Shown: positions 6,823 through 59,079 of the stretch, one piece after another
Numbering within the stretch: the stretch's first letter is position 1
How the letters are laid out: every line of letters starts with the position of its first letter
Virus record (IMG/VR): IMGVR_UViG_3300005537_000001
Span: 62,001 to 126,000 of that record
Direction: 5' to 3' (one strand)
Length of the DNA: 64,000 bases
Notes under the pieces: generated by a model
The model's input: only the letters and a program-made list of their open reading frames with translations
Databases searched by the model: none
Told to the model about the DNA's origin: nothing
Program-made: the position numbers and the translations under genes

Positions 6823-7947
6823 ATGAAAACGTATCTCGTAGGTGGAGCTGTTCGCGACCAGCTGATGGGTAAAGATGTTAGCGACCTCGATTGGGTAGTG
6901 GTTGGAGCTACCCACGATGAAATGATCGTCAGCGGATACGAGCGCGTTGGTGCTGATTTTCCCGTCTACCTTCACCCCGAAACTAAGGATGAGTATGCTC
7001 TGGCTCGCACGGAGCGAAAGAGCGGTAAGGGATATCTCGGCTTTGAGGTTAAATTCGGTACGGATGTTACCATCGAACAGGATTTGGAACGTCGCGATCT
7101 CACCATCAATTCAATCGCCATGGAGCGAGGTAGCGAGGGTTGGTATTTCACCGACCCATTCAACGGTCGCGCTGACATTCAGAATAAGGTGCTGCGCCAT
7201 ACGAGTCCAGCATTTTCTGAAGATCCGCTGCGCGTTATTCGTCTCGCGCGCTTTTACGCGCGCTTTGAGGATTTTACGATAGCTCCGGAAACAGTAGAGC
7301 TTGCATCTAAGCTTGTTGATTCAGGTGAGCTCGAGCACCTATCACGTGAGCGCTTTTGGGCTGAAATGGAAAAGACGCTCGATCAGACGGCGCGGCTTGA
7401 TAGATTCTTTAGCGCGCTTGATATCTTTGGAGTTATGGATAAGGTATCGTTCTTCAAGGACGTGTTTGGCACTCCATGGTGTCAGCGCCAAACATTCTTG
7501 ATTCCAGCTATCGCGGCAAACCTTGATAATTTCTACATCCCGCTGACTTTACAGCTTGATGCGTTCGTGGCTCTTATCGCAAGCGACAATGCCGAGCAAA
7601 AATCGCAAGTAATTCCGCTAAAGGCGAAAAAGCTTACAAGCGCCATTCGAGCAATTCGAAGTGGAGTAGCTGGACGATCCCTTGCCGAAAATATTTTAGG
7701 ATTCTTGAAAAGTCAACGGGCATTTACCGCTGGTAGCGGCATGGATGATATCATCAACACTATGCGACTTGGTGAACATGTTGGAATTGACTTTCCGATT
7801 AGCTCTTTACAGCTTAGTCGCGCGTTCCACTACGCGTCAGCTATTACTGGTGTCAACTATCAGCACCTGAGCGGACCAGCTGTTGGTAGAGCCATCGACG
7901 CTGATCGACTTGAAGCTATTGACGTGTCGCTTCGCGATCAATCATGA
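6823..7947 (+). CDS. cca: class II tRNA nucleotidyltransferase (CCA-adding enzyme)
   Basis: VGGAVRD, DLD, ARTERK, RRDLTIN, EDPLRV.R.ARF. Confidence 0.92.
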
Positions 7948-8231: not shown

Positions 8232-8341
8232 AGTGGCTGAAGCGACTTTGGAATAAAATAAAGCCGAAGCGGTGGATGTGCCCAACATGTCTAGGTTATG
8301 GGTGCTACGAGTGTGATTACCGAGGTGACATAGACACATGA
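8228..8341 (+). CDS. 37-aa Cys-rich mini-protein (CPTCLGYG-CYEC)
   Basis: ATGA overlaps at both ends; not in ORF track. Confidence 0.55.
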   Translation: MKWLKRLWNKIKPKRWMCPTCLGYGCYECDYRGDIDT

Positions 8342-9423
8342 AAGCCAAGAAAGAAACAACCCTTTTCACCGTGTTGACTGGATCACATCTCTACGGTAAC
8401 GCGAGCGAAACATCGGATTTTGACTACAAGGCCGTCTGCGTCCCTCCTCTCGATGAACTGCTTCTCAACACCAAGATAACAAACCGCAAGGAAAAACCGG
8501 TTGGTCTCAAGCAAGGTGATAAGATGGCGGCCGGTGAAGCTGAAACCGAATATCTTCCGCTCCAAGTTTTCCTCGATGACTTCTTCAATGGTCAAACCTA
8601 CGCCCTTGAGGTAGCCTTCGCGGTGAAGCAGGGAAAGTTTGAGCTCTTCTCGCCCAATGATCGAGATACGTTAGAAGCATCTACTTCCCGCGATATCGAC
8701 ATCGATCCAGGCTATATTAGGGATATTATTTCCGATCTCATAAATCTTTATCTCACGAAAAACGTCAAGAAGATGGTTGGTTACGCGGTATCGCAGTCCA
8801 AGCTGTATGGTTTGAAGACTCAGCGCTACACTTCGTTGAACGAAGCTTTGTGCATCATCGAGGAATATTCGCACGACTTCTTGAGTCCAAATGACAACAA
8901 TGAGAAGCTTACCTTCAATGATTCGCCAATTCTTCTCGCTCGACTGCTTGCGCTACCACACATCAAGGAAATTCAAATCTTCAATGCTGATGGTGGAAGC
9001 GCGCTTGCACCAGCTCTCGAAATCTGCGGAAAGCAATATCCGTACACGAGTCGAATTTCTACCGTCGTAAAATCAATGCTGAAAACAGTTGGTGATTATG
9101 GTGCCCGCGTTAAGGAGTTCGACGGGCAGGGTGTTGATTGGAAAGCGCTATCCCATGCCATCAGGATAACTGATCAGGTTCTCGAGTTGTGCAGCACAGG
9201 TTTTCTCACATTTCCACGCCCGAACGCTCAGTTCTTATTGGATGTAAAGACCGGGAAATTGACGCTTGACGAGGCGACAGACTACCTCAATGCCGCATTT
9301 GCGAAGGTGGATGATGCGATTATCACCTCAAAATTGCAAGAACGGACGCCTGAACTAGAGAAAAAATTCAGGGAATGGAAAATTCAGGTTCTCAGGTCAA
9401 TCTACGGAGTTGACGTTGGATAA
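8338..9423 (+). CDS. Pol beta-superfamily nucleotidyltransferase (RlaP/NrdC.11-like)
   Basis: GSHLYG...SDFD motif; K...HA.R helix. Confidence 0.8.
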   Translation: MKAKKETTLFTVLTGSHLYGNASETSDFDYKAVCVPPLDELLLNTKITNRKEKPVGLKQGDKMAAGEAETEYLPLQVFLDDFFNGQTYALEVAFAVKQGKFELFSPNDRDTLEASTSRDIDIDPGYIRDIISDLINLYLTKNVKKMVGYAVSQSKLYGLKTQRYTSLNEALCIIEEYSHDFLSPNDNNEKLTFNDSPILLARLLALPHIKEIQIFNADGGSALAPALEICGKQYPYTSRISTVVKSMLKTVGDYGARVKEFDGQGVDWKALSHAIRITDQVLELCSTGFLTFPRPNAQFLLDVKTGKLTLDEATDYLNAAFAKVDDAIITSKLQERTPELEKKFREWKIQVLRSIYGVDVG

Positions 9424-28232: not shown

Positions 28233-28261
28233 TTTACACCAGACCAGATGCGTGATAGAAT
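28233..28261 (+). promoter_or_regulatory. sigma70-like promoter of tmRNA
   Basis: TTTACA-17-TAGAAT with TG. Confidence 0.7.
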
Positions 28262-28267
28262 AAGTTT

Positions 28268-28623
28268 GAAAACAGCGTAAACGTAGATTGCGAAAATTGG
28301 TGACACCCGGGTTCGAATCCCGGCATCTCCACCAAAAGCATCTTCTTTTGGGGCAGACCTTTGAGGAGTCGAGGTAGCAACGTAAACCCTCCAGTAAATG
28401 TTGCATTGAGGATGCTTTTGATGGGGATGATACATGGCATTCGACCATCAGTGAATAACCTTCTATGCGCTCGATAGGCGTTCGCCGTAAGCGAAGCAAA
28501 TCCAATAAAAGCTAATGATGCTTTTTTCGGGGAAGAACTACGCCTAGCGGCCTAGTCCCTGCGGGGCTTAAACCACCCTGTAACCTAACGGTTAGGGAGG
28601 AGATCAGACAAGGGTCTCCTCCC
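28268..28623 (+). ncRNA. ssrA: circularly permuted two-piece tmRNA, tag ANDAFFGEELRLAA
   Basis: T-arm and CATCTCC-ACCA at 28306-28334 precede GGGGATG at 28423; G3:U70 pair; tag 28511-28555. Confidence 0.9.
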
Positions 28624-28646
28624 GCTCCTACGCTAGGAGGCGTGAA

Positions 28647-29944: not shown

Positions 29945-30240
29945 TATGCAGTCAATCATCCTCATAATACTCGGTGGAATTGGTTTAGGCCTATCCTTGG
30001 AAGTTCCTCACCGTGAGAACTTTACACCTGACCACGCGGTTGGTGCCGGCGTCTGCGGAATTTTGTGGGTTATGCTCTGCTTCGCGCTAGCGATGAGGCT
30101 AACGTTTGCCGCGTAATCTACATAAATGAAGATCACGGTTACGCAGGTTAAGAGAAAGTTTACTTTTTGGGGATTCTGTATATAACTATATCAAATCAAC
30201 TAAACGCTAGTTGATCACTTCTAACCAACGTGGAGCACGT

Positions 30241-31359
30241 ATGGACAAAAAGAAAGAAATTACCGTATTCATCGGTCGATTTTCCCCATTTCACAATGGT
30301 CACGCTGAAGTGCTCAAGCGGGCGCTGGAAACCTCACAAGTAGTTCTCGTGCTGGTTGGCAGCTCTGGGCAGGCACGGACCACCAAAAATCCCTTCACCT
30401 TCGAAGAACGCCGTCAGATGATTACCGACTACGTTCGATACCTAGGCGCGATATGGCGCCCTGGTCAGGGAGGTGAGCTAATTGTCGAACCAATCTACGA
30501 TCATCCCTACAACGACAACAAGTGGATTGAAGGCGTCCAAGCCGTTGTCAACAGGGTAAAGGCAGAAAATACCAGCCTTCGTGGACTGTCAAACTGGTAC
30601 AATTATCTTACCGGCTCAGATCGCGACGCAACTACCTGGTATCTCAACGCCTTCGGTGATTTCTTCGAGAAGGACCTTATCACCAACCATTCAGCTGGAT
30701 TAGACTTAAGCGCGACAAAGATTCGTGACATTCTATTCAACACGGAAACGCTGGTTGAGCTTGAAGTCAAGCTGAATAAGCTTGTACCGTCATCGACTCT
30801 CAGCCACCTGATCGCGTTCGTGGATCATCACCCAGCATATTCGGAGCTGGCGAAGGAATACCTGTACATTGAAAGGTACAAGGAGAGCTACAAGCTGGCT
30901 CCCTATCCGGTAAGCATTCAAACCGTCGACGCGTGCGTGATTCAATCCGGACACGTGCTTGTCTGCGTTCGCGACAACTTCCCCGGCAAGGGGCTTTGGT
31001 GCCTGCCGGGTGGACATCTTGACATTGATCTCGGAGAACGCCTCCTTGACGCGGCCATCCGTGAGCTCACGGAGGAAACTCGAATCGAGCTTTCAAAAGC
31101 GCAGCTTTATGGCTCCGTGCGTGACAAGGAGGTGTTCGATCATCCCGGCCGCAGCCTCAAGGGTCGAGTTATAACGATGGCCTACCTCTTGAAGCTGGAC
31201 GATACGAAACCCCTACCGAAGGTGAAACCTCAGAAGGGAGAGGTTAAGAAGGTAATGTGGTTGCCGATCGCCGAAGCGCTGTCGAGCAAGAACATGGACA
31301 AGTGGTTCGACGATCACTATTCGATTTTGGAAACCCTATACGGGCGGATTAAAAACTGA
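30241..31359 (+). CDS. nadM: bifunctional NMN adenylyltransferase/Nudix ADP-ribose pyrophosphatase
   Basis: GRFSPFHNGH; Nudix box GG...GE....AA.REL.EET. Confidence 0.92.
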   Translation: MDKKKEITVFIGRFSPFHNGHAEVLKRALETSQVVLVLVGSSGQARTTKNPFTFEERRQMITDYVRYLGAIWRPGQGGELIVEPIYDHPYNDNKWIEGVQAVVNRVKAENTSLRGLSNWYNYLTGSDRDATTWYLNAFGDFFEKDLITNHSAGLDLSATKIRDILFNTETLVELEVKLNKLVPSSTLSHLIAFVDHHPAYSELAKEYLYIERYKESYKLAPYPVSIQTVDACVIQSGHVLVCVRDNFPGKGLWCLPGGHLDIDLGERLLDAAIRELTEETRIELSKAQLYGSVRDKEVFDHPGRSLKGRVITMAYLLKLDDTKPLPKVKPQKGEVKKVMWLPIAEALSSKNMDKWFDDHYSILETLYGRIKN

Positions 31360-31398: not shown

Positions 31399-32889
31399 AT
31401 GGCAGCAAAAAGAAAAGAATTTACGGTCGAGCAATACCTCTCTCCTTCCAAGAAGGATATTGAGTATATGCAGCCGGATCAGTTGAAAATCAGCTTGATC
31501 TGCCGCATGGACAGCTACAAGTTTGCGCACCCCTTCGCTTACCGTAAGGGAATTCAGGCGATGAGCGCCCACATGCTGGCGCGAGTCAAGAGCCACGTTA
31601 CGATCATTCCAGCCGGAATGCAACTGCTGACCAAGAAGTATCTAACGCAGCGCATCACGATGGCCGACGTGGACGCCGCAGAGCAATTTGCGATTGGTCA
31701 CTTTGGCCGCAAGCTCTTCGCTCGCGACAGCTGGGAAGGCGTTGTCAACGAGCATGGCGGAGCCATTCCCATCATCATCCGCGCGGTGCCGGAAGGTACT
31801 CGAATTCGCGGTGGGCAGCCGCTGTATTCAGTAACGGCGTTCGGTGAGCTGTATTACTGGATGTCAACCGCCTTCGAAACGCTCCTGCAGCGCGGTATCT
31901 GGTATCCAACGACCATCGCCACGATGGACTACGATATCAAAAATGATATTCGTATGTTCTACGAAGATACTGGCGCGGACATGGCGATGCTTCCATTCGC
32001 TCTCCACGATTTCGGTGCTCGCGGTGTGACCGCACCCGAACAGGCAGAAATTGGCGGTTTTGCCCACACGATTGGATTCATGGGTTCAGACAACATCGAA
32101 GGAATACTTACCGCAAACTTCTACTACAAGTGCGCGATGTCGGCTTTCTCGGTCTACGCTACCGAGCACAGCGTTGAGTGCTCCTTCGGGCTGGGTTCTG
32201 AGGATGAGGTTGAGTACATTCGACATCAGCTGCGTCAAGCTCCAGCTGGATCGATAGTTTCGATCGTCATCGACGGTAAGGATACCTACCGAGCAACCGA
32301 AGCGATCTGCACAACGCTTCGAGATGAGGTGATCGCGTGCAAGGCGAAGGTAGTTCTTCGCCCAGACAGCGGTGATATGCAGGAAATCGTTCCTCGCCTG
32401 CTCCGCCGGCTCGATCAAGCGTTTGGGCACGTCGTTAACAAGAAGGGCTTCAAGAAGATCAACTACGTTGGTATCCTGCAGGGAGACGGAGTCGATCACC
32501 TCGCGATTCGCAGCCTGCTTGGCAACATCATGTCGCGTGGATATTCGGCCGACAACGTTATCTTCGGCAGCGGAGGTGCGCTGCTGCAGAAGGTCAACCG
32601 TGACACCTACAAGTTCGCCCAAAAGGCGAGCGCCATGATGGTTGATGGGAAGTGGATTGGATTGGCGAAAGATCCCATCACCGACAAAGGTAAGAAATCG
32701 GAGGAAGGCGTGCTCACCTTGCTTCGCAGTCGAATGACCGGAGAGCTGATGACCGGTCGGTTGGACGATGGTCCATTCGACACCGAGTGGGAAGATGTTC
32801 ACCAGCTTGTCTATCACTGCGGCCGTCTCTTCAACGAGACAACCCTCGATGAGGTTCGCAATCGGGTTGAAGCCCTAGGAAACTACTGA
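31399..32889 (+). CDS. nadV: nicotinamide phosphoribosyltransferase
   Basis: DSYK..H, HDFG.RG, ATEHS, RPDSGD, QGDGV, FGSGG.LLQK..RDT. Confidence 0.93.
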   Translation: MAAKRKEFTVEQYLSPSKKDIEYMQPDQLKISLICRMDSYKFAHPFAYRKGIQAMSAHMLARVKSHVTIIPAGMQLLTKKYLTQRITMADVDAAEQFAIGHFGRKLFARDSWEGVVNEHGGAIPIIIRAVPEGTRIRGGQPLYSVTAFGELYYWMSTAFETLLQRGIWYPTTIATMDYDIKNDIRMFYEDTGADMAMLPFALHDFGARGVTAPEQAEIGGFAHTIGFMGSDNIEGILTANFYYKCAMSAFSVYATEHSVECSFGLGSEDEVEYIRHQLRQAPAGSIVSIVIDGKDTYRATEAICTTLRDEVIACKAKVVLRPDSGDMQEIVPRLLRRLDQAFGHVVNKKGFKKINYVGILQGDGVDHLAIRSLLGNIMSRGYSADNVIFGSGGALLQKVNRDTYKFAQKASAMMVDGKWIGLAKDPITDKGKKSEEGVLTLLRSRMTGELMTGRLDDGPFDTEWEDVHQLVYHCGRLFNETTLDEVRNRVEALGNY

Positions 32890-33092: not shown

Positions 33093-33250
33093 GCAAGAAG
33101 CCAAAATTCAAGAAGGTAACGATACCGGTAGGCAAGCGCTGCTTGTATTGCCGAGGTACCGGGCTGAAGCGAGCGTATGATCCGACGCGGACCGACGATT
33201 GCACGTGCTACTATTGCGCCGGCACCGGTTACGACGGAACCCGGTCATGA
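33055..33250 (+). CDS. DnaJ-type CxxCxGxG zinc-finger mini-protein (start uncertain)
   Basis: CLYCRGTG and CYYCAGTG; stop overlaps pnuC ATG. Confidence 0.55.
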
Positions 33251-33819
33251 TCCTCGAAATCGCAGCAAACGCTGTTACCGCGGCATCGATACTTCTCGCA
33301 ACTAGAAACAGCATTCATACCTGGTGGACTGGCATAATCGGCTCACTGCTGTTTCTCGCGCTGTTCTATCTCAACCAGCTCTACGCCGATTCGATGCTGC
33401 AAATTTTCTTCGTCGCTACCAGCTTGATGGGATGGTGGCAGTGGAAGCACTTTCGGGGTAAGAAAGTAGATAGGCCAATCTCCAAAACGGATGGTTCTAC
33501 CGCCATCATTATCTCGTGCTTAGCGATCGTAGCGACCATGGGATATGGATGGCTGCTAAAAACATTCACGAATGATTTTATGCCCTACGTCGATGCCGCG
33601 GTAATGGCGCTCAGCATAATCGCGCAGTGCCTGCTGATGCAGCGCAAGCTTGAAAGCTGGTGGGTTTGGGTAGTCGTGAATACCATCTCAATTCCTCTCT
33701 ACGCCTCACGTGGAATGTATGTTACGGCGGCGCTCTACGCTGCCTACTGGATCAACGCATGGATTGGAGCAGCATCATGGAAAAACATAGCGCGGTCTCA
33801 AATGTTGAGCGCGGCATGA
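33247..33819 (+). CDS. pnuC: nicotinamide riboside transporter
   Basis: W..GII, LYAD..LQ.FF...GW..W, DA....SI.AQ.L...K..E.W..W. Confidence 0.9.
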   Translation: MILEIAANAVTAASILLATRNSIHTWWTGIIGSLLFLALFYLNQLYADSMLQIFFVATSLMGWWQWKHFRGKKVDRPISKTDGSTAIIISCLAIVATMGYGWLLKTFTNDFMPYVDAAVMALSIIAQCLLMQRKLESWWVWVVVNTISIPLYASRGMYVTAALYAAYWINAWIGAASWKNIARSQMLSAA

Positions 33820-33966: not shown

Positions 33967-34977
33967 GTGAAGACATACGGCCTAATCGTCGGTAAGTTCT
34001 CCCCGCTTCACCGCGGTCATGAGCACCTCATCAGTGAAGCTGAAAAACAGTGTGATAGCCTGTTGGTTCTGAGCTACTCGAATCCGGAATTTCGCAAGTG
34101 CGAGGCAAAGATTAGAAAAGAATGGTTGCAGGCACGGTTTCCTTCGGTTCGCTGCGTCGTTCTTGACCCGATTAATTTTCCATCGATGCCAGACAACCAA
34201 GCGAGCGACGCTGAACAGCAGGAATTTTTCAGCTGGATAGTCAACGACGTTTTGGAATATCCGGTGACCCACCTGTTCGCTAACGAGCGATGGGCTGAAA
34301 AGTGCGCACTAAACCTTTCGATTGGCGCGGGGCACCATGTAACAGCGGTAGCATTGGATCCACTGCGGGTGAAGAATCCGATCAGCGCGACATCCATCCG
34401 AGAAGCTCCACACCTCAACGCAAATTGGATGTCACCATTCGTTCGCGCGTCATACGTTACGCAGAAGATAGTTCTTCTTGGTGGTGAATCAACGGGTAAA
34501 ACGACTCTCGCGAAAGCCCTTGCTGAAAAATTCGATACCAGCTGGGTACCTGAATATGGCCGTGAGCTGTGGGAAGAAAAGAATGGTGAGCTTGTTTTTA
34601 GCGACATGTTGAGAATCGGTCATGAGCAGAAATTTCGTGAAAAGTATTTCAACATCGGCGCTAATCGCTATCTCTTCTGCGATACCTCTCCTCTTACCAC
34701 GATGGGGTACAGCATGTGGCTGTACGGTAAAGTTGATGACAAGCTCGTGAAGCTGGCTGAAGAACTATACGACGGCGTCATTTTTTGCCAGGCAGATTTT
34801 GCGCACGTGAACGACGGGACGAGAGTTGGGCATGATTTTCGAAGCATGCAGCAAGATTGGTACAAGCACGTCATTCCGAAGATGAAGTGCCCAATCATCT
34901 CGGTGACCGGTACCATTGAGGAACGCGTTCTTACCGTGACCAACTGGCTGAAGACATCCAACCACAATTGGAACTAG
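33967..34977 (+). CDS. nadR: NadR-like NMN adenylyltransferase/ribosylnicotinamide kinase
   Basis: GKFSPLHRGH; GGESTGKT; EYGR; DT. Confidence 0.92.
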   Translation: MKTYGLIVGKFSPLHRGHEHLISEAEKQCDSLLVLSYSNPEFRKCEAKIRKEWLQARFPSVRCVVLDPINFPSMPDNQASDAEQQEFFSWIVNDVLEYPVTHLFANERWAEKCALNLSIGAGHHVTAVALDPLRVKNPISATSIREAPHLNANWMSPFVRASYVTQKIVLLGGESTGKTTLAKALAEKFDTSWVPEYGRELWEEKNGELVFSDMLRIGHEQKFREKYFNIGANRYLFCDTSPLTTMGYSMWLYGKVDDKLVKLAEELYDGVIFCQADFAHVNDGTRVGHDFRSMQQDWYKHVIPKMKCPIISVTGTIEERVLTVTNWLKTSNHNWN

Positions 34978-34985
34978 GAGATAAA

Positions 34986-37194
34986 ATGAAGGCGATGATG
35001 CTCGCTTTACTGTTGATCGGTGCCGCTCAGGCGGATGAGCTTGATGAGGTAGTTGTAACAGCTTCGCGGCAAGGTATCCAGTCGCTCCAGAAGATACCAG
35101 CTTCCATCACGGTAGTTGACCTAAAGGCTGAAGGACGCCTTGGAGCTACCGATCTCAGCGATGTCGCTAATTCGATTCCATCTCTCACCATCGAGCAAGG
35201 TGGACCAGGGTTAAACAAGATTGACATCCGTGGAATTACCGTTGAAAATGCCGACGTTCTCAACAACATCGACAGCAGACCTCTTGTCGCGGTCTACGTT
35301 GACGATACCCCGCTCGCCCTCGACGGCTTCAATCCGGATCTTAAGGTATTTGACCTTGACCGCATCGAGGTGCTGCGCGGTCCTCAGGGCACCCTCTACG
35401 GTGCCAGCTCCATGGCCGGCACGATTCGCTACATCACGAAAAAACCGAATCCCCAGGAATATTCTGGATCCGATGAAATTACGGTTTCAGATACGGTTGG
35501 CGGCGGCGTCAACTACGGCATCAAGGCGAGCGTCAACCTCCCGCTCAGCGCTCAAACGGCGCTGCTACTAAGCGGATACAACGCGCGCAATTCTGGATGG
35601 ATCAACAACATTCAGAATGGTCAGAACGGTGAAAATTGGGATCGGTCAACTCAAGGTCGAGCCGCGCTGCGTTGGACGCCGTCTGACTATTTCACCCTCG
35701 ACGCGAGCGTTCTCTTCGAGGAGCTTAACACCGGTGGAAGCAACTTTTCCTTCTCGGGCTTGGGCAAGAACGAATACGCAAGCTTAACTCCAACTCCAAT
35801 CACCGACAACATGAAGGTGTACAACCTAACCGAAACGATTACCCCGGATTTCGGTACTATCATCTCCTCAACCTCGTACACCACGCGAACTACCGGTTTC
35901 AACGACCAGGGGCAGTACCTTTCGGAGCTGTTCTTCGGAGTAACCGAGCCTACCACCTACGTCAACCAGAACACCCTGTCGCAGTTCTCCCAGGAATTTC
36001 GAGTCGTTTCTCGCCAAGATCAGCGCACGCGCTGGATTGTTGGCACCTTCTTCAATCACCTCAGCCGCGTCAACTACCAAGATGACAGCGGCGTCGGTTT
36101 TGGGCAGTACATTGGCTTCGATCCTCGAACGATCGGTGGATTTACGGCGGACAGCGTTTTCTCTGGAACTCAGGGCGTTAGGGAACGCGATTTTGGCATC
36201 TTTGGTGAGGTTACGTGGGCGCTAACGGATCGCCTCGACTTTACGGCCGGAGCCCGCTACTTCAACTGGCGACAGCGCTTCAACCTGCAGTTTGGTGGAC
36301 CAGGTGGATACGGAGCGTACGATACCGGCAGCAACGTTGTCAACAAGCAGCTCATCGAGGACGTTGGAGCTAAGGCGCAGGGAGTCAACCCGCGCTTCAT
36401 CGTTAGCTACAAGCTTTCCGATGACGCTATCGTCTTCGCCGAGGCGGCTGAAGGATTTCGCTACGGTGGTGCGAACGAGGCGGTACCAAACGCCAACGTT
36501 CCTGGCGCGTGCGGTGGGCAGCTGCAAAGTCAATTTCACCTGACTTCAGCTCCACCGTCCTACGGCCCAGATCACCTGTGGAGCTACTCGCTTGGTGAGA
36601 AGTCGCTCTTCCTTGACGACAAGCTTCGCGTCAACGCGACCATCTTCCTCATCGATTGGAAGAACGTGCAGGAGGCTGCCTACCTCGGTTCTTGCTCGTA
36701 TACGTACACAACCAACGCTGGAACGGTTATTAGCAAGGGCGGAGAGCTGGAAGCGACCTACAAGCTGGCACGCTATCTTACGCTCGGAATTAACGGATCC
36801 TTTACCCATGCCGCGGCAGATGGTGCTCTTCCCAACGTTGGAGCTCAAAGCGGAGATCTTACTCCGTACAGCCCAGAATGGCTTGGAGCCGCAACTGTTG
36901 ATTACAAGCTTGGTTTCAGCCGGTTGAACGTTGAATATTCGTACCACGGTCGAAGCGGAACGCGCTTCGACCCAGCTGATCCCAGCTACGTAGTTCTACC
37001 AGCCTACAAGAATCTCAATCTGGCTGAAACGTTCGAAGTTCGGTAGGACGCAGGTTAGCTTGTTCTCGCGGAACGCGTTGAACAGCTCACAGGTAACGAT
37101 GATCTACCCGGATCTTCTCGGCACTCAGCCTGGAAATCAGGTAGCGTACGCCAGACCCAGAACCATTGGGGTTCGATTCTCACAGCAATTCTAG
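34986..37194 (+). pseudogene. TonB-dependent receptor with +1 frameshift near 37041
   Basis: signal peptide, EVVVTA, plug RIEVLRGPQGTLYG; 50-aa tail ...PRTIGVRFSQQF in next frame 37042-37194. Confidence 0.88.
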
Positions 37195-42915: not shown

Positions 42916-43001
42916 GGGTGTGTATGCAAGAGGCCAAAGCGCGCAGTCTGTAAAACTGACTCCTTCGGGATTCGTAGGTTCGACTCCTACCGCACCCACC
43001 A
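42916..43001 (+). tRNA. tRNA-Tyr(GTA)
   Basis: cloverleaf, long V arm. Confidence 0.92.
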
Positions 43002-43005
43002 TTTT

Positions 43006-43139
43006 AGCAAACCGTTGATTAGGATTATCTGGCGCAGTGAGTTTCGATACCACGCCTACAGGTGCTAACATCTGTAGAGCCTCAGTTTAGGGAGAGGCAT
43101 CTGACCGCCTACGGGCACCCCTATCGCTCTTTGTTTGCT
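43006..43139 (+). ncRNA. element copy 1, permuted, around T-arm-like/acceptor/D-arm pieces
   Basis: AGCAAAC-CG..GATTATC ... TTT-GTTTGCT. Confidence 0.7.
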
Positions 43140-43217
43140 CTTTTAAAGGGACACGGCTGCAGTTGTGAACGTGGAGAAATCCATTCGGTGGCATGCTGCA
43201 GCAACCTCCCTACTTTT

Positions 43218-43324
43218 TGCAACCGCTTAAAGAAGGTTATCTAAGTTCAACTCTTAGGCTGCTCACGCAGTCACGGCATATCCTCACGGATACGGCGCCA
43301 ACTCCGTCTTTTACCTTTGTTGCA
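43218..43324 (+). ncRNA. element copy 2, permuted
   Basis: TGCAAC-CG..GGTTATC, CTAAG-TTCAACT-CTTAG T-arm, TTT-GTTGCA. Confidence 0.7.
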
Positions 43325-43524
43325 TTTCTTTCGAAGTGTCTCGTTAAAAACGGGTCTTACAGGTCCACGAAGATCGAGTCAACCGTCACTTTGAATCCTT
43401 CCTCTTGATCGACTAAGCCAAAAGTCACCGGCTCACGATGCTGGAAACGTCGCATAACCGACTGTAGAGGACCATTTTACAGCTACCAGAACGATCTCTG
43501 CTTAAGCAAATCGCTGGGGCTCCT

Positions 43525-43598
43525 GCGGGTTTGGTATAGAGGTTGTGCCAAAGCCTTCCAAGCTTTAGAGGCGGGTCCGAGTCCCGCAACCCGCTCCA
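43525..43598 (+). tRNA. tRNA-Gly(TCC)
   Basis: cloverleaf. Confidence 0.9.
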
Positions 43599-44308: not shown

Positions 44309-44944
44309 ATGCATCACCTTTTATACAAAACCACAAATATTCTCAACAATCGCTTCTACGTTGGGATGCACTCTACTAAGAACCCTAAAGACAGGTATCT
44401 TGGGAGTGGCAAGCGAATAAAGTACGAGATCCAAAAGTATGGTAAAGAAAACTTCAAGAGAGAAATCTTGGAGGAGTTCCCAACTCGTAAGGCGCTCGAA
44501 GATGCTGAAGCAGAAGTCGTGAATGAGGAACTTCTTTCCGATCCTCTCTGTCTCAATTTGAAAAATGGTGGAGAAGGTGGTGGTAGAATATGGAATTCTA
44601 ACCATGCAAAGAAATTTCATCGGGCTGGTTGGGAAGCGATGCATAGAAACAAAGATCATGTAGCAGCCGGATTAAAATCGGGTAAAACTAGAGAAAAAAG
44701 AAATCAAGAAGGATTGTACCCTCCTGGAACTTTTACGAGTCATTTTGGTGGAATGCAGCATTCTGAAAAATCTCGTGCGCAGATGAAAAATACTCATGCT
44801 AGAAACGCTCATCAGCGGGCTGAAAAAAATTCAAATTTTGGCAAGCGAAATGCTTGTGTTAACAAGGACGGAAAGAATAAAAGAATTCCACTAGATCAAC
44901 TTGAAATGTTTATAACTGATGGATGGACTAAAGGTCTAGTTTAG
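44309..44944 (+). mobile_element. free-standing GIY-YIG (Seg-like) homing endonuclease
   Basis: LLYKTTN..N.FYVG.H....D.YLGSG. Confidence 0.85.
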
Positions 44945-45259: not shown

Positions 45260-45465
45260 AAATTCGCTCAACAAGAGCGCGTCAGTTTGATCGGAAAAAT
45301 CCAGTGTTCACCTGGATAATGCACTGCAAGGCCAAATGTCCTAGGAAACTTTTGGTACTCAGTTATTGGTAGAAGAAATAGAGAGTAAGCTTCTCAGAAA
45401 TAAGCTACCAAGCTAAAAGCAAACGGCAGCGGGGCTAGCGTTGTCCATAACGATCAATTTAATTC

Positions 45466-45787: not shown

Positions 45788-45913
45788 GAGGTAATAGCTC
45801 AATAGTAGAGCATCAGGGAAGTAGAAGAAATAGGAACTACGCTGAAGTACAAAGCGACTATCTAAAGTATTGAAAACCGGAAGACAATGGTGCGATCCCA
45901 TTTTACTTCACCA
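45788..45913 (+). tRNA. tRNA-Phe(GAA)-like gene with 52-nt insert
   Basis: acceptor, D and T arms intact; TTGAAAA loop after insert. Confidence 0.65.
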
Positions 45914-46021
45914 TCAAATAAAGCTGCTACGAGCGAGTGAAAAATAGCAGCGCCGCCGGAAACGGTCCCACCTGGAGTGGTTAAGAGAATCTCGCATGCG
46001 GCAGAAATGCCGTCTCTTTAT

Positions 46022-46166
46022 GAAGTTGTAGGGAAGTGGTTAAACCCAGCGAAGCCGAAAGGCATATCCATTCTCGCCTTTTGTTGCGCAAGCAACCGAT
46101 AGAAAATGGTTATCATTAAGTCGCTGCCGAAAGGCTACGCCGGTTCGAATCCGATTGCCAACTTCA
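46022..46166 (+). tRNA. Tyr-like tRNA body interrupted by element copy 3 (46066-46114)
   Basis: GAAGTTG/CAACTTC acceptor; anticodon unresolved. Confidence 0.55.
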
Positions 46167-46219
46167 CTCCCAATCTTTTTGCTGGTTCTTATAAATATTC
46201 TCGTAAGGAGAATTTTAAA

Positions 46220-46930
46220 ATGAAGCCTGCAAAATATGTAAGACAAGAAAATCGAAAATATCACTACATTTACAAAATTACTCGATTTGATAATCATTAC
46301 TATTATGGCCGTCATTCAACGGATAATTTAGATGATGGATATTTTGGTAGTGGCAAACGTCTTTGGCATTCCATAAATTATCATGGCATAGAAAAACACA
46401 CTAAGGCGATTTTGGAATATCTTCCAACACTAACCTCTCTAAAAATAAGAGAAAGCCAGATAGTAAATGAAACATGTCTAAATGATCCCCTCTGCTTGAA
46501 CCTCCAATTAGGAGGTGGTGGTGGATTCATTAGTGAAGAACATCAGCGAAAGGCCTCATTAGCAGGTAGAGATAAAGCTCTCACTGCAATGAGGGAAATT
46601 TTTAAAAGTGGTAGCGAAGAAGCGGCGCGAAGAGCAAAAAATTCTGCTGCTACTCAAAAGCGTATGAGGCAAAATGGTGAGTTAACATATACCAAAAGAG
46701 AGCGAAATAACATCACCACTGTAGCCGCAACATTAGCCGCCGCCACTCCTAAATCTAGGGAAAAGAAAAAGAAAACATTTGCTGAGCGAAAACATCAGCA
46801 GGGTGAAAAGAATTCAAATTTTGGAAAGAGAAATGCTGTCATCAACAAAGATGACAAGAATAAGAGAATCCCTCTGTCAAAATTAGATGAGTATCTAAAT
46901 GCCGGATGGACCAGAGGTCTAATACGATAG
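46220..46930 (+). mobile_element. second GIY-YIG (Seg-like) homing endonuclease
   Basis: YIYKIT...YYG.HST....D.Y.GSG; C-terminus shared with 44309. Confidence 0.85.
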
Positions 46931-47625: not shown

Positions 47626-47748
47626 GAGGAAGTAGCTCAGTGGCAGAGCAGCCGCCAAACATCGTTTACGATATTTTGTCGAGCAATCGACCGTTGTATA
47701 ATGGTTATCCAAAGCAGCTTGTCGTAGGTTCGAATCCTATCTTCCTCT
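47626..47748 (+). tRNA. tRNA-Trp(CCA)-like gene interrupted by element copy 4 (47661-47709)
   Basis: GAGGAAG/CTTCCTC acceptor; TCCAAA directly after element. Confidence 0.65.
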
Positions 47749-47782
47749 CTTATTCTTTGAATATACGATTGATAAATATCGT

Positions 47783-48325
47783 ATGGCAAATCAATTTACA
47801 AAAGCAAAGGCATTAGGATTACCCAATCCTATACCATCCGAAGCTACATTAAAGAAATGGTCAGTTTCAGCTACAATAACCAATAATCGTAGATTTTCAG
47901 ATCCCAAAAATAGGGATCGTCAAAGTGCAGCTATGAAGCTTGCTGTTGAGAAATATCCAGAATCTTATGGTCCTTCGAATAGAGGTAGAACCAAGCGGAT
48001 AGATAAACATGGTCAAGCCTTTCAGGGAAAGTGGGAGCTGTATTTCTTTGAATGGTGCTTAGAAAATAACGTGGAAATTAAACGAGTTACTGAATCATTT
48101 CCATATGAATGGAATGGTAGTAGAAAATATTTTCCGGATTTTTATTTACCACAACTCAGCATGTATGCTGAAGTTAAGGGATATGAAACTCCTAGAGATT
48201 TAGCAAAATGGCGTGATTTTCCACATCGTCTAAAAATTATTAGGCGGGCGGATATCGAAAAGATATTAAAGAGGAATTTTGATTTAGGGTCTCTAGCTCA
48301 ATTGGTTAGAGCAGGAAACTCATAA
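47783..48325 (+). CDS. PD-(D/E)XK endonuclease
   Basis: Y.PDFY......EVKG. Confidence 0.8.
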   Translation: MANQFTKAKALGLPNPIPSEATLKKWSVSATITNNRRFSDPKNRDRQSAAMKLAVEKYPESYGPSNRGRTKRIDKHGQAFQGKWELYFFEWCLENNVEIKRVTESFPYEWNGSRKYFPDFYLPQLSMYAEVKGYETPRDLAKWRDFPHRLKIIRRADIEKILKRNFDLGSLAQLVRAGNS

Positions 48326-48767: not shown

Positions 48768-48918
48768 AGTTTTACTGCAAGAGCTGGAGGACGGGGGTAT
48801 CACCGAAATTGACCTCTCCTCGTTGGGCAGCGGCTAGTCGGTATGCCGGTTGTGTTGGAGCGTGATTTCACGCTGTCTTGGAGGAAACTAACAAGGCGTT
48901 GCGAGCACAAATTTTTAC

Positions 48919-49001
48919 GCGAGTGTGGATAATGAGAATTGGCAGATCTAACAGGCTCAAACCCTGTACCTTTGTGGGTTCGACTCCCACCACTCGTACC
49001 A
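48919..49001 (+). tRNA. tRNA-Leu(CAA)
   Basis: large D loop, short V region. Confidence 0.82.
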
Positions 49002-49102: not shown

Positions 49103-49110
49103 AAATCTAT

Positions 49111-49193
49111 GCGAGTGTGGATAATGAGAATTGGCAGATCTAACAGACTTAAAATCTGTTCCCTTGTGGGTTCGACTCCCACCACTCGTACCA
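49111..49193 (+). tRNA. tRNA-Leu(TAA)
   Basis: near-duplicate of Leu(CAA). Confidence 0.82.
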
Positions 49194-52266: not shown

Positions 52267-52400
52267 TGACAACCGTTGATGATTGGTTATCTTTCGCCAA
52301 AACTGAAAGGCTAGCACAATTGGAATAGTGCACCCAACTTAGACTTGGGAGATGAGGGTTCGAGTCCCCGCTAAAACATCGATCTTCGCTTTTGTTGTCA
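52267..52400 (+). ncRNA. element copy 8 around a circularly permuted tRNA
   Basis: TCTTTC-GCCA precedes GAAAGG; D arm; CCCAA-CTTAGAC-TTGGG; T loop. Confidence 0.75.
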
Positions 52401-53952: not shown

Positions 53953-54067
53953 TTCTGACTGTTGACAAGCCGTCGTAACGAGAAGGTGGACCTAGGGACT
54001 TTTACGGCTTTCTACCTAGGGCGTCAACGCATTGGCACTCGAGCGCTAAAATCGTTACAGTCAGATT

Positions 54068-55758: not shown

Positions 55759-55851
55759 GCTTCTGTAGTTTAATGGTAGAACGCCGGCCTTATACCCCGG
55801 ATAGCGCCAGATTAGCGCGTGGTGGAGGTTCGATTCCTCCCAGAAGCACCA
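55759..55851 (+). tRNA. tRNA with TAT anticodon and long variable region
   Basis: GCTTCTG/CAGAAGC; loop CTTATAC. Confidence 0.7.
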
Positions 55852-55859
55852 ATTTCAAT

Positions 55860-56011
55860 GCGTCGATAGCTCAGAGTTCTGGCGACTACCTTGTACAGGG
55901 GAAAGTTGGATGCTTGCTGCGACGGAGGCGGTTGATCACGCTTCTATAGCTCAAGCGAAGAGCAGCCGGTATTTAACCGGCGTGTCGGTGGTTAGAATCC
56001 ATCTCGGCGCT
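55860..56011 (+). tRNA. tRNA-Lys(TTT)-like gene with 80-nt insertion and ATAGCTCA direct repeat
   Basis: GCGTCGA/TCGGCGC; GCCGG-TATTTAA-CCGGC. Confidence 0.6.
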
Positions 56012-58140: not shown

Positions 58141-59079
58141 ATGCCGCGCCCTAAAGAAACACCAACGTTAAAGATTAAGCGTCTATCACCAAATCTTGCT
58201 GGTCGCGACTTTGTGTGTGGAGATATCCATGGCAGCTACTCATGCGTTACGGCAGCTCTCAACGGACTCAATTTCGACAAGACGAAGGACCGTCTAATCT
58301 GCGCGGGTGACCTCGTTGACCGCGGCCCATCCAACGAAGCGTGTCTTGACTTAATCAACCAACCATGGTTCTTCGCGTGCATGGGTAACCACGAGCAGCT
58401 CATGTTCGAATTTTTCAAAGGCGGCTACTATGGGCAGTGGTGGCAGCCTAACGGAGGTTCATGGGGAACCAGATACAAAACTGAACAAACTACGATGGGC
58501 GAATTTGTTCGAAAGGCGATCAAGCAGATTGAGGATCTTCCGTACCTCATAACCGTTGAAAAGAAAGATGGCAGCTTGTTTCACGTGCTCCACGCTGAGC
58601 TTCCGCCGCGCGCACCGTTTGATTCATCGCATCGAGAAGACTGTCAAGATGAGGTTATTACCGACGCGATGCTAGCAGACCCAGCTACATTTACAAAGGT
58701 AGCTACGATTCAGACCCAAGATGGTGACACGATTACTTGGGGTCGGTATATTTTCTATTCGCTCTACAAGCAGCAGCTTGATGAGCGCTCGATTAAAAAA
58801 TTTAGCACGATGGCTAAGCAGCAGAAGCTTGGTGCCGTTTTTAATCCGGCGCTATCGCACATTTATTCCGGTCACACCATCATGCGCGCTCCAGTAACCT
58901 TTATGGGTCAGACAAACCTTGATACAATGGCCTACGCGTCGTACAAGCTTCCAAGCCGGTACAACGATGGCAGCCCCGAGCTATGGTGTGGTTTGACGAT
59001 AGCTGAACCGGAGACTGGAAAATTTTGGTTGGCCAACGATAGAGAATTCAAAGAAGTTCAGGCGATTGTTATTCTCTGA
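58141..59079 (+). CDS. Ser/Thr protein phosphatase (NinI/PphA-like)
   Basis: GDIHG, GDLVDRG, GNHE, GHT. Confidence 0.9.
   Translation: MPRPKETPTLKIKRLSPNLAGRDFVCGDIHGSYSCVTAALNGLNFDKTKDRLICAGDLVDRGPSNEACLDLINQPWFFACMGNHEQLMFEFFKGGYYGQWWQPNGGSWGTRYKTEQTTMGEFVRKAIKQIEDLPYLITVEKKDGSLFHVLHAELPPRAPFDSSHREDCQDEVITDAMLADPATFTKVATIQTQDGDTITWGRYIFYSLYKQQLDERSIKKFSTMAKQQKLGAVFNPALSHIYSGHTIMRAPVTFMGQTNLDTMAYASYKLPSRYNDGSPELWCGLTIAEPETGKFWLANDREFKEVQAIVIL

What the first reader, a model, noticed from the sequence alone, without database searches (positions are those of the whole stretch)
45788..45913. tRNA-Phe-like gene with a different 52-nt insert at position 31/32
Removing 45818-45869 leaves TCAGG-TTGAAAA-CCGGA. 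No intact Phe tRNA occurs in the window. The insert lacks the TTTGT/TTATC motif but shares GTAGAAGAAATAG with a hairpin near 45368-45410, suggesting a second insert class.
Basis: partly seen in the sequence, partly recalled or inferred. Interest (0 to 1): 0.62.

Follow-up and report, generated by a model that had tools for sequence, protein, structure and literature searches.

The report
Interrupted phage tRNA-Phe gene, rare insert family
A giant-phage tRNA-Phe gene is split just before its anticodon by a 52-base insert from a small, previously undescribed family, one of several unexplained mini-insert families that interrupt phage tRNA genes.

Summary
Window 45788-45913 matches the Rfam tRNA model over its full length (41.8 bits). 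Removing exactly 45818-45869 gives a 74-nt tRNA-Phe(GAA) with A73 and an encoded CCA. No other Phe gene is in the window.

The window is part of a 368-kb jumbo-phage contig. Its tRNA array is full of free-standing homing-endonuclease genes.

The insert is not group I and not bulge-helix-bulge. It is also not the 'TTTGT/TTATC' class I insert: a covariance model built from 11 class I copies does not hit it.

It does have relatives. Two other phage lineages (L116 group, L177) carry an insert at the same 31/32 site of a Phe-like tRNA(-like) gene. All three share a hairpin with an invariant loop GAAGUACAA and a covarying stem.

The 13-mer shared with 45369-45381 is exact but marginal, and it is absent from those relatives.

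A survey of IMG/VR found more than 100 interrupted phage tRNA genes, in several insert families, mostly 5' of the anticodon.

Most likely (about 0.45) this is an intervening sequence removed from the RNA by a protein-dependent cut-and-join. This is inferred, not shown. A decaying pseudogene or a tRNA-scaffolded RNA remain real rivals, because two of the three host genes are not canonical tRNAs.

The parts
45788..45817 (+). tRNA-Phe 5' exon: acceptor 5' strand, D arm (D loop AATAGTA lacks the usual GG), nt 26, anticodon-stem 5' strand TCAGG
45818..45869 (+). 52-nt intervening sequence ('class II'), lying between tRNA positions 31 and 32
   Evidence: Unique deletion that restores a tRNA. Homologous inserts at the same site in L116 and L177.
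45840..45856 (+). Conserved class II hairpin P2: stem CGCT/AGCG, invariant 9-nt loop GAAGTACAA (45844-45852)
   Evidence: 3 of 4 stem pairs show compensatory changes among the 3 members; the loop is identical in all.
45830..45861 (+). Possible outer helix P1, ATAG (45830-45833) with CTAT (45858-45861). Shared with L177; replaced by a 9-bp helix in L116.
   Evidence: Weak: no covariation.
45821..45833 (+). 13-mer GTAGAAGAAATAG, repeated at 45369-45381
   Evidence: Marginal, and not conserved in L116 or L177.
45870..45913 (+). tRNA-Phe 3' exon: loop TTGAAAA (anticodon GAA 45872-45874), stem CCGGA, variable AGAC, T arm with unusual loop TGCGATC (G at 55), acceptor 3' strand, A73, CCA (45911-45913)
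45366..45412 (+). Upstream hairpin carrying the second copy of the 13-mer; not inside a tRNA
46054..46116 (+). Class I insert copy inside a degenerate tRNA-like stretch, directly upstream of the SegE-like endonuclease gene
   Evidence: 60.2 bits
46220..46930 (+). SegE-like GIY-YIG homing endonuclease gene. The ORF from 46106 is probably over-extended: homologs start near residue 48, and a 236-aa cluster member exists.
47626..47749 (+). tRNA-Trp(CCA) gene interrupted by a 51-nt class I insert (47657-47707)
   Evidence: 63.4 bits
47783..48325 (+). Endonuclease gene (PHROG endonuclease families), 34 nt downstream of the interrupted tRNA-Trp
44309..44944 (+). GIY-YIG homing endonuclease gene inside the tRNA array

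Best explanation
45788-45913 is a jumbo-phage tRNA-Phe(GAA) gene whose transcript carries a 52-nt intervening sequence between positions 31 and 32, at the 5' edge of the anticodon loop.

The insert belongs to a small family ('class II'). The family is defined by a hairpin with an invariant loop GAAGUACAA, and it sits at the same site of Phe-type tRNA(-like) genes in at least three divergent phage lineages.

I infer that the insert is removed from the RNA. The likely route is an endonuclease that recognises the insert's own hairpin, followed by joining of the two tRNA halves by a phage or host RNA ligase (Rnl or RtcB type). The product would be a functional tRNA-Phe.

Shown: the gene, the exact insert, its family, and its conservation. 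Inferred: transcription, excision, ligation and function.
For: (1) It is a full-length tRNA match, and a single deletion restores a canonical 7-nt loop with U33, GAA and A37.

(2) It has A73, the Phe discriminator (from established knowledge), and an encoded CCA, as do 23 of the 25 tRNA genes of this array.

(3) The mature sequence folds to a cloverleaf as its minimum-energy structure.

(4) Phe and Trp are present in the array only as interrupted genes.

(5) The insert is old and constrained. The L116 group is a syntenic ortholog in a phage whose intact orthologous tRNAs are only 65-77% identical. The insert is 69% identical (33/48; shuffle p about 0.018). The hairpin loop is invariant and its stem covaries across three lineages.

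(6) All three members have the insert immediately 5' of UUG(A/G)A, that is, at site 31/32.

(7) The same array holds class I inserts. Their RNA structure is strongly supported: 14 pairs, 7 with compensatory changes, and conserved G-U pairs that would not pair as DNA.

(8) More than 100 interrupted phage tRNA genes exist in IMG/VR, in recurrent families that cluster after nt 27-32.

(9) The class I motif scan returned one true copy among 185,579 bacterial and archaeal species genomes, on a contig binned with an Acinetobacter MAG.

(10) Jumbo phages commonly encode Rnl1, Rnl2 or RtcB (PMC7824862). Short unexplained tRNA introns were reported in Lak megaphages (PMC6784885).
Against: There is no RNA data and no uninterrupted allele.

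The window copy has an A-G mismatch in the anticodon stem, no G18-G19 in the D loop, and G instead of U at position 55.

Two of the three class II hosts are not canonical tRNAs after any simple excision. L116 has only a 5-bp acceptor, an 8-9-nt loop and no CCA, and scores 34.8 bits. L177 has no room for a variable loop and is not reported by Rfam at E<=0.01.

The window insert is weakly structured (z -0.05 to +0.6). It lacks the 9-bp outer helix seen in L116.

The precursor is predicted to prefer a fold in which the insert's 5' end pairs with the acceptor 3' strand (-23.9 against -19.1 kcal/mol for the enforced cloverleaf).

No RNA ligase, RtcB or splicing endonuclease was found in the 64-kb window. 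No processing gene is shared next to the three class II loci.
Confidence: 0.45

Rival explanations
1. Decaying pseudogene. An ancestral phage tRNA-Phe gene was inactivated by insertion of a small (possibly mobile) element. The window copy is simply the least decayed survivor and is not spliced.
For: The elbow is non-canonical (no GG in the D loop, G55) and the anticodon stem has an A-G mismatch. The Rfam score is among the lowest in the array. The orthologs in L116 and L177 have broken or abnormal tRNA features. The array contains other wreckage: a class I copy in a degenerate tRNA-like stretch at 46054-46116, a truncated class I half at 52371-52400, and several homing-endonuclease genes.
Against: All four stems, U33, GAA, A37, A73 and CCA are intact in the window copy, despite a divergence at which intact orthologous tRNAs are only 65-77% identical. 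The insert itself is conserved, with a covarying stem and an invariant loop, which neutral decay would not preserve. There is no target-site duplication and there are no terminal inverted repeats.
Confidence: 0.25
2. tRNA-scaffolded functional RNA. The conserved part is the insert (the hairpin with loop GAAGUACAA). The tRNA-like arms only provide processing, stability or access to tRNA-binding proteins. The RNA is not spliced and does not decode.
For: Across the three lineages the hairpin loop is invariant, while the tRNA parts (acceptor, anticodon arm, variable loop) drift out of the canonical form in two of them. The loop begins with GAA preceded by U or C, so it resembles an anticodon presentation (direct reading of the sequence).
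Against: The window copy restores a near-perfect anticodon arm only after exact removal of the insert. UUG(A/G)A is retained right after the insert in all three. No function or partner is known.
Confidence: 0.15
3. The insert is excised without re-ligation, as with intervening sequences in bacterial 23S rRNA. That would leave a two-piece tRNA held together by its stems.
For: The inserts are hairpins with internal loops. Most families sit inside or at the edge of the anticodon-stem 5' strand, after nt 27-29, where a nick is splinted by the opposite strand. This needs only a common host RNase (inference).
Against: For Phe the break would lie at 31/32, at the loop edge, where it is not splinted. 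Nicks in anticodon loops made by anticodon nucleases inactivate tRNAs (established knowledge). The hairpins are short for RNase III.
Confidence: 0.08
4. Self-splicing intron of a known type (group I) or an archaeal-type bulge-helix-bulge intron.
For: Bacterial tRNA introns known so far are group I and lie in anticodon loops (established knowledge).
Against: The insert is 52 nt, against about 200 nt or more for group I. No Rfam intron or ribozyme family matched, even at E<=1. The 5' exon ends in G, not U, and the insert ends in A, not G. No 3-nt bulge / 4-bp helix / 3-nt bulge arrangement can be drawn at the junctions (inspection). The position is not 37/38.
Confidence: 0.02

Closest known systems
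'Enigmatic' tRNA introns of Lak megaphages (Devoto et al. 2019, PMC6784885)
   Same: Short, non-group-I inserts in tRNA genes of very large phages, including a tRNA-Phe(GAA). No Rfam match, mechanism unknown, and conserved between related phages.
   Different: Lak introns are 79-114 nt and were placed 3' of the anticodon (about 37/38) by tRNAscan's eukaryotic mode. They contain T-arm-like segments. This insert is 52 nt, lies 5' of the anticodon (31/32), and shows no resemblance to the Lak intron sequences by eye.
Class I ('TTTGT/TTATC') phage tRNA insert, defined here from 11 copies
   Same: Same array, same size (51-53 nt), and the same general region of the tRNA (after nt 26-32). It is a hairpin with an internal loop.
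   Different: No sequence similarity. The class I covariance model does not hit the Phe insert. Class I has a 9-bp P1 with conserved G-U pairs and a GNRA-capped P2. Class II has a 4-6-bp hairpin with the 9-nt loop GAAGUACAA.
Group I introns in bacterial and phage tRNA genes
   Same: They interrupt the anticodon loop of bacterial-type tRNA genes. They are often associated with homing endonucleases.
   Different: Group I introns are about 200 nt or more, with a conserved P1-P9 catalytic core, a U before the 5' splice site and a terminal G. None of these is present.
Archaeal/eukaryal protein-spliced tRNA introns (bulge-helix-bulge, EndA/TSEN plus RtcB or Trl1)
   Same: Short introns without catalytic capacity, removed by an endonuclease plus a ligase. 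This is the mechanism I consider most similar in logic.
   Different: No bulge-helix-bulge motif, a bacterial-virus context, position 31/32, and no EndA-like gene seen in the window.
Intron plus free-standing homing endonuclease 'collaborative homing' (cyanophage psbA; recalled from memory, not read here)
   Same: HEG-less inserts sit next to free-standing endonuclease genes. A SegE-like gene lies about 350 nt downstream of the Phe gene and an endonuclease gene 34 nt downstream of the Trp gene.
   Different: In the known case the intron is a self-splicing group I intron. Here no link between endonuclease target and insert site was tested, and L116 and L177 have no endonuclease gene next to the insert.

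Membership tests
tRNA-Phe (bacterial type) | Cloverleaf with 7-nt anticodon loop, U33, anticodon GAA, purine 37 | tested here: met
   Met after removal of 45818-45869: TCAGG-TTGAAAA-CCGGA. ARAGORN calls Phe(gaa), 74 nt. Rfam 41.8 bits.
tRNA-Phe (bacterial type) | Discriminator A73 and 3' CCA | tested here: met
   ...TTACTTC-A-CCA
tRNA-Phe (bacterial type) | Conserved elbow nucleotides G18-G19 and T54-U55-C56 | tested here: not met
   D loop AATAGTA has a single G. T loop is TGCGATC (G at 55).
Group I tRNA intron | Catalytic core P3-P9, length about 200 nt or more | tested here: not met
   52 nt. No Intron_gpI or other ribozyme match at the gathering threshold or at E<=1.
Group I tRNA intron | U at the end of the 5' exon and G at the end of the intron | tested here: not met
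   The 5' exon ends ...CAGG. The insert ends ...AAGTA.
Bulge-helix-bulge (archaeal-type) intron | Two 3-nt bulges carrying the splice sites, separated by a 4-bp helix | tested here: not met
   By inspection, the four exon nt before the bulge (AUCA) cannot pair with the required insert nt (AAAG). No such element appears in the predicted folds.
Bulge-helix-bulge (archaeal-type) intron | Splicing endonuclease (EndA family) encoded by host or virus | tested here: inconclusive
   None among about 50 window ORFs scanned with Pfam and PHROGs. Only 64 kb of the 368-kb contig was available and the host is unknown.
Class I phage tRNA insert (this study) | Match to covariance model R1 (AAAACAUCGU...UUUGU-hairpin-ACCG...AUGGUUAUC) | tested here: not met
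   No hit on 45818-45869 at E<=10 with filters off. The true copies score 60-63 bits.
Class II phage tRNA insert (this study) | Hairpin with invariant loop GAAGUACAA and covarying stem, inserted immediately 5' of UUG(A/G)A (site 31/32) of a Phe-type tRNA(-like) gene | tested here: met
   Window, L116 group and L177. There are only three distinct members, so the definition is provisional.
Lak-megaphage tRNA introns | 79-114 nt, placed after position 37, with an internal T-arm-like segment | tested here: not met
   Compared with Table S6 of PMC6784885: different length, site and sequence.
Any spliced intron | A ligated exon-exon product exists in RNA | not testable with these tools

The most novel reading that the evidence does not exclude
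Tailed phages carry a whole, so far undescribed repertoire of 40-65-nt hairpin introns in their tRNA genes. I saw class I, class II and at least families A and B. They are inserted 5' of the anticodon (after nt 26-32) and removed by a splicing route new to bacteria: either a phage-encoded recognition nuclease plus an Rnl/RtcB ligase, or RNA-intrinsic chemistry. Class II, with its invariant GAAGUACAA loop, would be a Phe-specific member, and its loop would be the recognition or catalytic element.
Probability: 0.3. Interest if true: 0.85.

Novelty: new variant of a known kind. Interest (0 to 1): 0.62.

Why it matters
In bacteria and their viruses, tRNA splicing is thought to rely on self-splicing group I introns. 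A 52-nt insert cannot be one.

If it is removed, phages must use a cut-and-join pathway, or a new small ribozyme, that has not been described. tRNA-repair ligases in phage genomes would then have a housekeeping role beyond countering host anticodon nucleases.

There is also a practical point. Standard annotation (default ARAGORN, tRNAscan bacterial mode) misses these genes, so phage tRNA repertoires and codon-supply arguments are undercounted.

The survey here suggests that hundreds of such genes sit unannotated in viral metagenomes. It also supplies motifs and a covariance model to find them.

If instead the RNA is an unspliced tRNA-scaffolded hairpin, that would be a new kind of phage non-coding RNA.

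Tried and rejected
- Close relatives or an uninterrupted allele. Exact scans for the 5' exon in IMG/VR and JGI metagenomes found only this contig. Other assemblies of the same sample are 100% identical. blastn of the array against 50,697 GenBank phage records found only generic tRNA matches. blastn of the Phe and Trp inserts found nothing real.
- Using neighbouring proteins as synteny anchors. The 274-aa and 180-aa neighbours turned out to be mobile endonucleases found in many unrelated arrays. They were useful only for sampling arrays.
- ARAGORN deletion scans for class I hosts were too permissive to fix the splice junctions. Junctions for class I remain ambiguous by 1-3 nt.
- Link between the Phe insert and the 45369 hairpin: no similarity beyond the 13-mer. 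The motif is absent from L116 and L177.
- Loop GAAGUAC pairing with the acceptor 3' strand. This is possible in the window and L116, but not in L177, so I treat it as coincidence.
- Promoter/terminator scan around the gene: nothing above shuffled expectation.
- Search for further class II copies in 1.5 Mb of fetched phage loci: none. Most hits of the two class II pattern scans were coding-sequence false positives.
- Shared processing genes next to the class II loci: none.
- Literature: four full-text searches for short phage tRNA introns returned only the Lak megaphage report, and two broader or looser ones added nothing.
- The protein structure and complex tools were not used, because no protein claim depends on them.

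Full report
**What is there**

Window 45788-45913 (+ strand) reads as a tRNA. Its parts are:
- a 7-bp acceptor stem (GAGGTAA/TTACTTC)
- a D arm (GCTC-AATAGTA-GAGC)
- an anticodon-stem 5' strand TCAGG
- 52 extra bases (45818-45869)
- TTGAAAA-CCGGA, then a 4-nt variable loop
- a T arm (AATGG-TGCGATC-CCATT)
- discriminator A and CCA

Rfam's tRNA model matches 45788-45910 end to end at 41.8 bits, with 65 nt where the model expects the 13-nt anticodon hairpin. Default ARAGORN does not report it.

I removed every possible segment (all starts, lengths 44-59) and re-ran ARAGORN. Only one deletion gave a tRNA of normal length: 52 nt after gene nt 30, giving a 74-nt tRNA-Phe(GAA). No other Phe gene is called in the window.

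**Context**

The window is bases 62001-126000 of a 368-kb viral contig (IMG/VR UViG_3300005537_000001). It has no close relative among GenBank phages.

The window carries:
- a permuted tmRNA
- NAD-salvage genes
- a CCA-adding-type nucleotidyltransferase
- an RlaP-like nucleotidyltransferase
- a DNA ligase
- a + strand tRNA array from 42.8 to 62.3 kb

Of the 25 array genes, 23 encode CCA, including this one.

The array is infested with free-standing homing-endonuclease genes:
- GIY-YIG at 44309-44944
- SegE-like at about 46220-46930
- an endonuclease at 47783-48325

Homologs of these sit in the tRNA arrays of many other large phages.

**The other insert class**

ARAGORN with introns allowed finds tRNA-Trp(CCA) at 47626-47749 with a 51-nt insert after position 32.

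The same insert type turned up in an unrelated metagenomic phage contig (L006). There the insert sits before an intact Asn anticodon stem-loop.

A fixed-spacing motif scan of IMG/VR found it in 8 more loci (7 contigs), and it recovered a second copy in the window at 46054-46116, first seen.

RNAalifold on 11 copies gives a 9-bp outer helix with conserved G-U pairs, an asymmetric internal loop, and a 5-bp inner hairpin. Of 14 pairs, 7 show compensatory changes. This 'class I' element is therefore a structured RNA, not a DNA repeat.

Across 185,579 bacterial and archaeal species genomes, the motif gave only one true copy. It lies on a 17.7-kb contig binned with an Acinetobacter MAG, which may itself be phage.

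**The Phe insert is a different class**

A covariance model of class I scores 60-63 bits on the two window copies. It does not touch 45818-45869 at E<=10 with filters off.

The insert is also not a known intron type:
- No Rfam intron or ribozyme family matches.
- It is four times too short for group I, and it lacks the U/G splice-site nucleotides.
- The junctions cannot be drawn as a bulge-helix-bulge.

**The shared 13-mer**

GTAGAAGAAATAG is exact at 45369-45381 and 45821-45833. BLAST E within the window is only 0.03-0.12, and nothing beyond the 13 bases aligns. The upstream hairpin is not unusually stable, it is not inside a tRNA, and the motif is absent from the class II relatives described below. 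I treat this link as unsupported.

**Relatives of the Phe insert**

A generic scan of IMG/VR asked for a D arm, then 66-92 nt, then a T arm.

One of these, L116, has an insert resembling the Phe insert. It is identical in four contigs of up to 494 kb. A further targeted scan added L177, a 57.8-kb contig.

The three members share a hairpin with the invariant 9-nt loop GAAGUACAA. Its stem is CGCU/AGCG, CGGC/GCCG or AGGU/GCUU, so 3 of 4 pairs show compensatory changes. The window and L177 also share the flanking ...GGAA(A)CUAC and GACUAUC segments.

In all three the insert ends immediately before UUG(A/G)A, that is, at site 31/32 of a Phe-type anticodon loop.

L116 is a syntenic ortholog (Ala ... 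Phe* ... Ala/Pro). Intact orthologous tRNAs of the two phages are only 65-77% identical, whereas the insert is 69% identical (33/48; shuffle p about 0.018). The insertion therefore predates the split of these lineages, and the insert has been conserved about as well as the exons.

**Reasons for caution**

The host genes of the two relatives are not canonical tRNAs:
- L116 has only a 5-bp acceptor helix with extra nucleotides on both sides, an 8-9-nt loop (UUGGACAA) and no CCA. Rfam scores it at 34.8 bits.
- L177 has good acceptor, D and T arms and a UUGAAGG loop, but no room for a variable loop. Rfam does not report it at E<=0.01.

The window copy is the best tRNA of the three, but it has its own defects:
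- It lacks G18-G19, has G at position 55, and has an A-G mismatch in the anticodon stem.
- Its insert is weakly structured.
- The precursor is predicted to prefer pairing of the insert's 5' end with the acceptor 3' strand (-23.9 against -19.1 kcal/mol for the enforced cloverleaf). The spliced sequence folds to the cloverleaf.

**The wider phenomenon**

For the 119 interrupted genes I threaded the remaining sequence onto a standard anticodon arm. The results were:
- Family A (intron begins UAA, contains ACAGCAA) lies after nt 28 or 29 in 19 of 24 well-scoring cases.
- Family B (ends ...UUACUU) lies after nt 28 in 7 of 7 cases.
- In both families the 5' exon typically ends in RCG.
- Class I lies after nt 27-32.
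- Only two well-scoring cases lie at 37/38, the canonical archaeal/eukaryal site.
- Several of the 119 are not single interrupted genes: family C is a nested tRNA-like arrangement, and others are a complete tRNA followed by a stray T arm.

The Phe insert's position, 5' of the anticodon, is therefore typical of phage mini-inserts. Lak megaphage introns differ: they are 79-114 nt and were placed after position 37.

Four full-text searches for short phage tRNA introns found no description other than the Lak report, and two looser ones added nothing.

**How it most likely works**

The steps below are inferred. The gene is transcribed with the array. The insert is then removed by an endonuclease that recognises the insert's own hairpin. 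The evidence for insert-intrinsic recognition comes from class I, which sits at different tRNA positions in different hosts.

The two halves would then be joined by an RNA ligase of the kind jumbo phages commonly carry (PMC7824862). For families inside the anticodon stem, the opposite strand would splint the nick, as Rnl2-type ligases prefer. For Phe, at the loop edge, an Rnl1- or RtcB-type enzyme fits better.

No ligase or splicing nuclease was seen in the 64 kb available. No processing gene is shared next to the three class II loci.

I give this reading about 0.45. The rivals are:
- a decaying pseudogene, about 0.25
- a tRNA-scaffolded hairpin RNA that is never spliced, about 0.15
- excision without ligation, about 0.08
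- a known intron type, about 0.02

**Verdict**

It is a second insert class with conserved relatives, but the proposed link to the upstream hairpin does not hold. It is a new variant within the barely explored category of short phage tRNA introns. Its function and mechanism remain untested.

Noticed in passing
IMG/VR loci L027-L144: More than 100 viral contigs carry tRNA genes with 40-66 extra nt between the D and T arms. They fall into recurrent families. Family A has RCG|UAA..hairpin..ACAGCAA.. and lies after nt 28/29. Family B ends ..GAGUUACUUC and lies after nt 28. Family C is a nested tRNA-like arrangement. I found no description of them in the literature searched.
   Followed up: partly
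window 46054-46116 and flanks 45990-46170: A third class I element sits in a degenerate long-arm tRNA-like stretch and is flanked by a 10-nt direct repeat GCCGAAAGGC. Its ATGGTTATC end coincides with the start codon of the over-extended endonuclease ORF at 46106.
   Followed up: partly
window 52309-52400: A tRNA-like gene (Rfam 31.4 bits) has an acceptor 3' strand that breaks off after GCTA into the 5' half of a class I element (AAAACATCG...TTTTGT). This is followed directly by a ribosome-binding site and an ORF. It looks like a truncated insert at a different tRNA position.
   Followed up: no
window 43000-43525: About 500 nt of non-coding, apparently structured sequence between tRNA-Tyr and tRNA-Gly. 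It gives a weak class I-like hit at 43190-43243 (17 bits, E 0.02) and no Rfam family at the gathering threshold.
   Followed up: no
window 34968-37046: A 692-aa TonB-dependent outer-membrane receptor (Plug plus beta-barrel) is encoded in a phage genome, next to NAD-salvage genes (NadR-like 30211-31359 and 33967-34977, NAMPT 31399-32889, PnuC 33199-33819).
   Followed up: no
window 28242-28646 and 62199-62272: A phage-encoded permuted (two-piece) tmRNA with tag ANDAFFGEELRLAA, and a tRNA with anticodon CTA (an amber-suppressor type, called 'Pyl' by ARAGORN).
   Followed up: no
window 48916-49001 and 49108-49193: An 86-nt direct repeat (92% identical) duplicates a tRNA-Leu(TAA)-like gene. With introns allowed, ARAGORN reads the second copy as anticodon TTA with a 7-nt insert at position 32.
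   Followed up: no
window 53953-54062: Rfam hit to the Rhizobiales sRNA Atu_At1 exactly at its threshold (60.1 against 60 bits), just upstream of tRNA-Ser(CGA). This may hint at an alphaproteobacterial host, as does the permuted tmRNA.
   Followed up: no
window 55759-55851 and 55940-56011: A tRNA with anticodon TAT and a long extra arm (93 nt), which is unusual for Ile. There is also a tRNA-like gene (36.9 bits) whose loop reads TATTTAA, with A instead of U at position 33.
   Followed up: no
window 6823-7947, 8338-9423, 58141-59079: A CCA-adding/poly(A)-polymerase-type enzyme, an RlaP-like 'RNA repair pathway' nucleotidyltransferase, and a metallophosphoesterase with a weak PHROG link to RNA ligase. 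These are RNA-end-processing genes that could belong to a repair or splicing pathway.
   Followed up: partly
L116 4412-4705: An ArfB-like RF-1-domain protein (peptidyl-tRNA hydrolase type) is encoded about 500 nt downstream of the class II-bearing tRNA-like gene.
   Followed up: no
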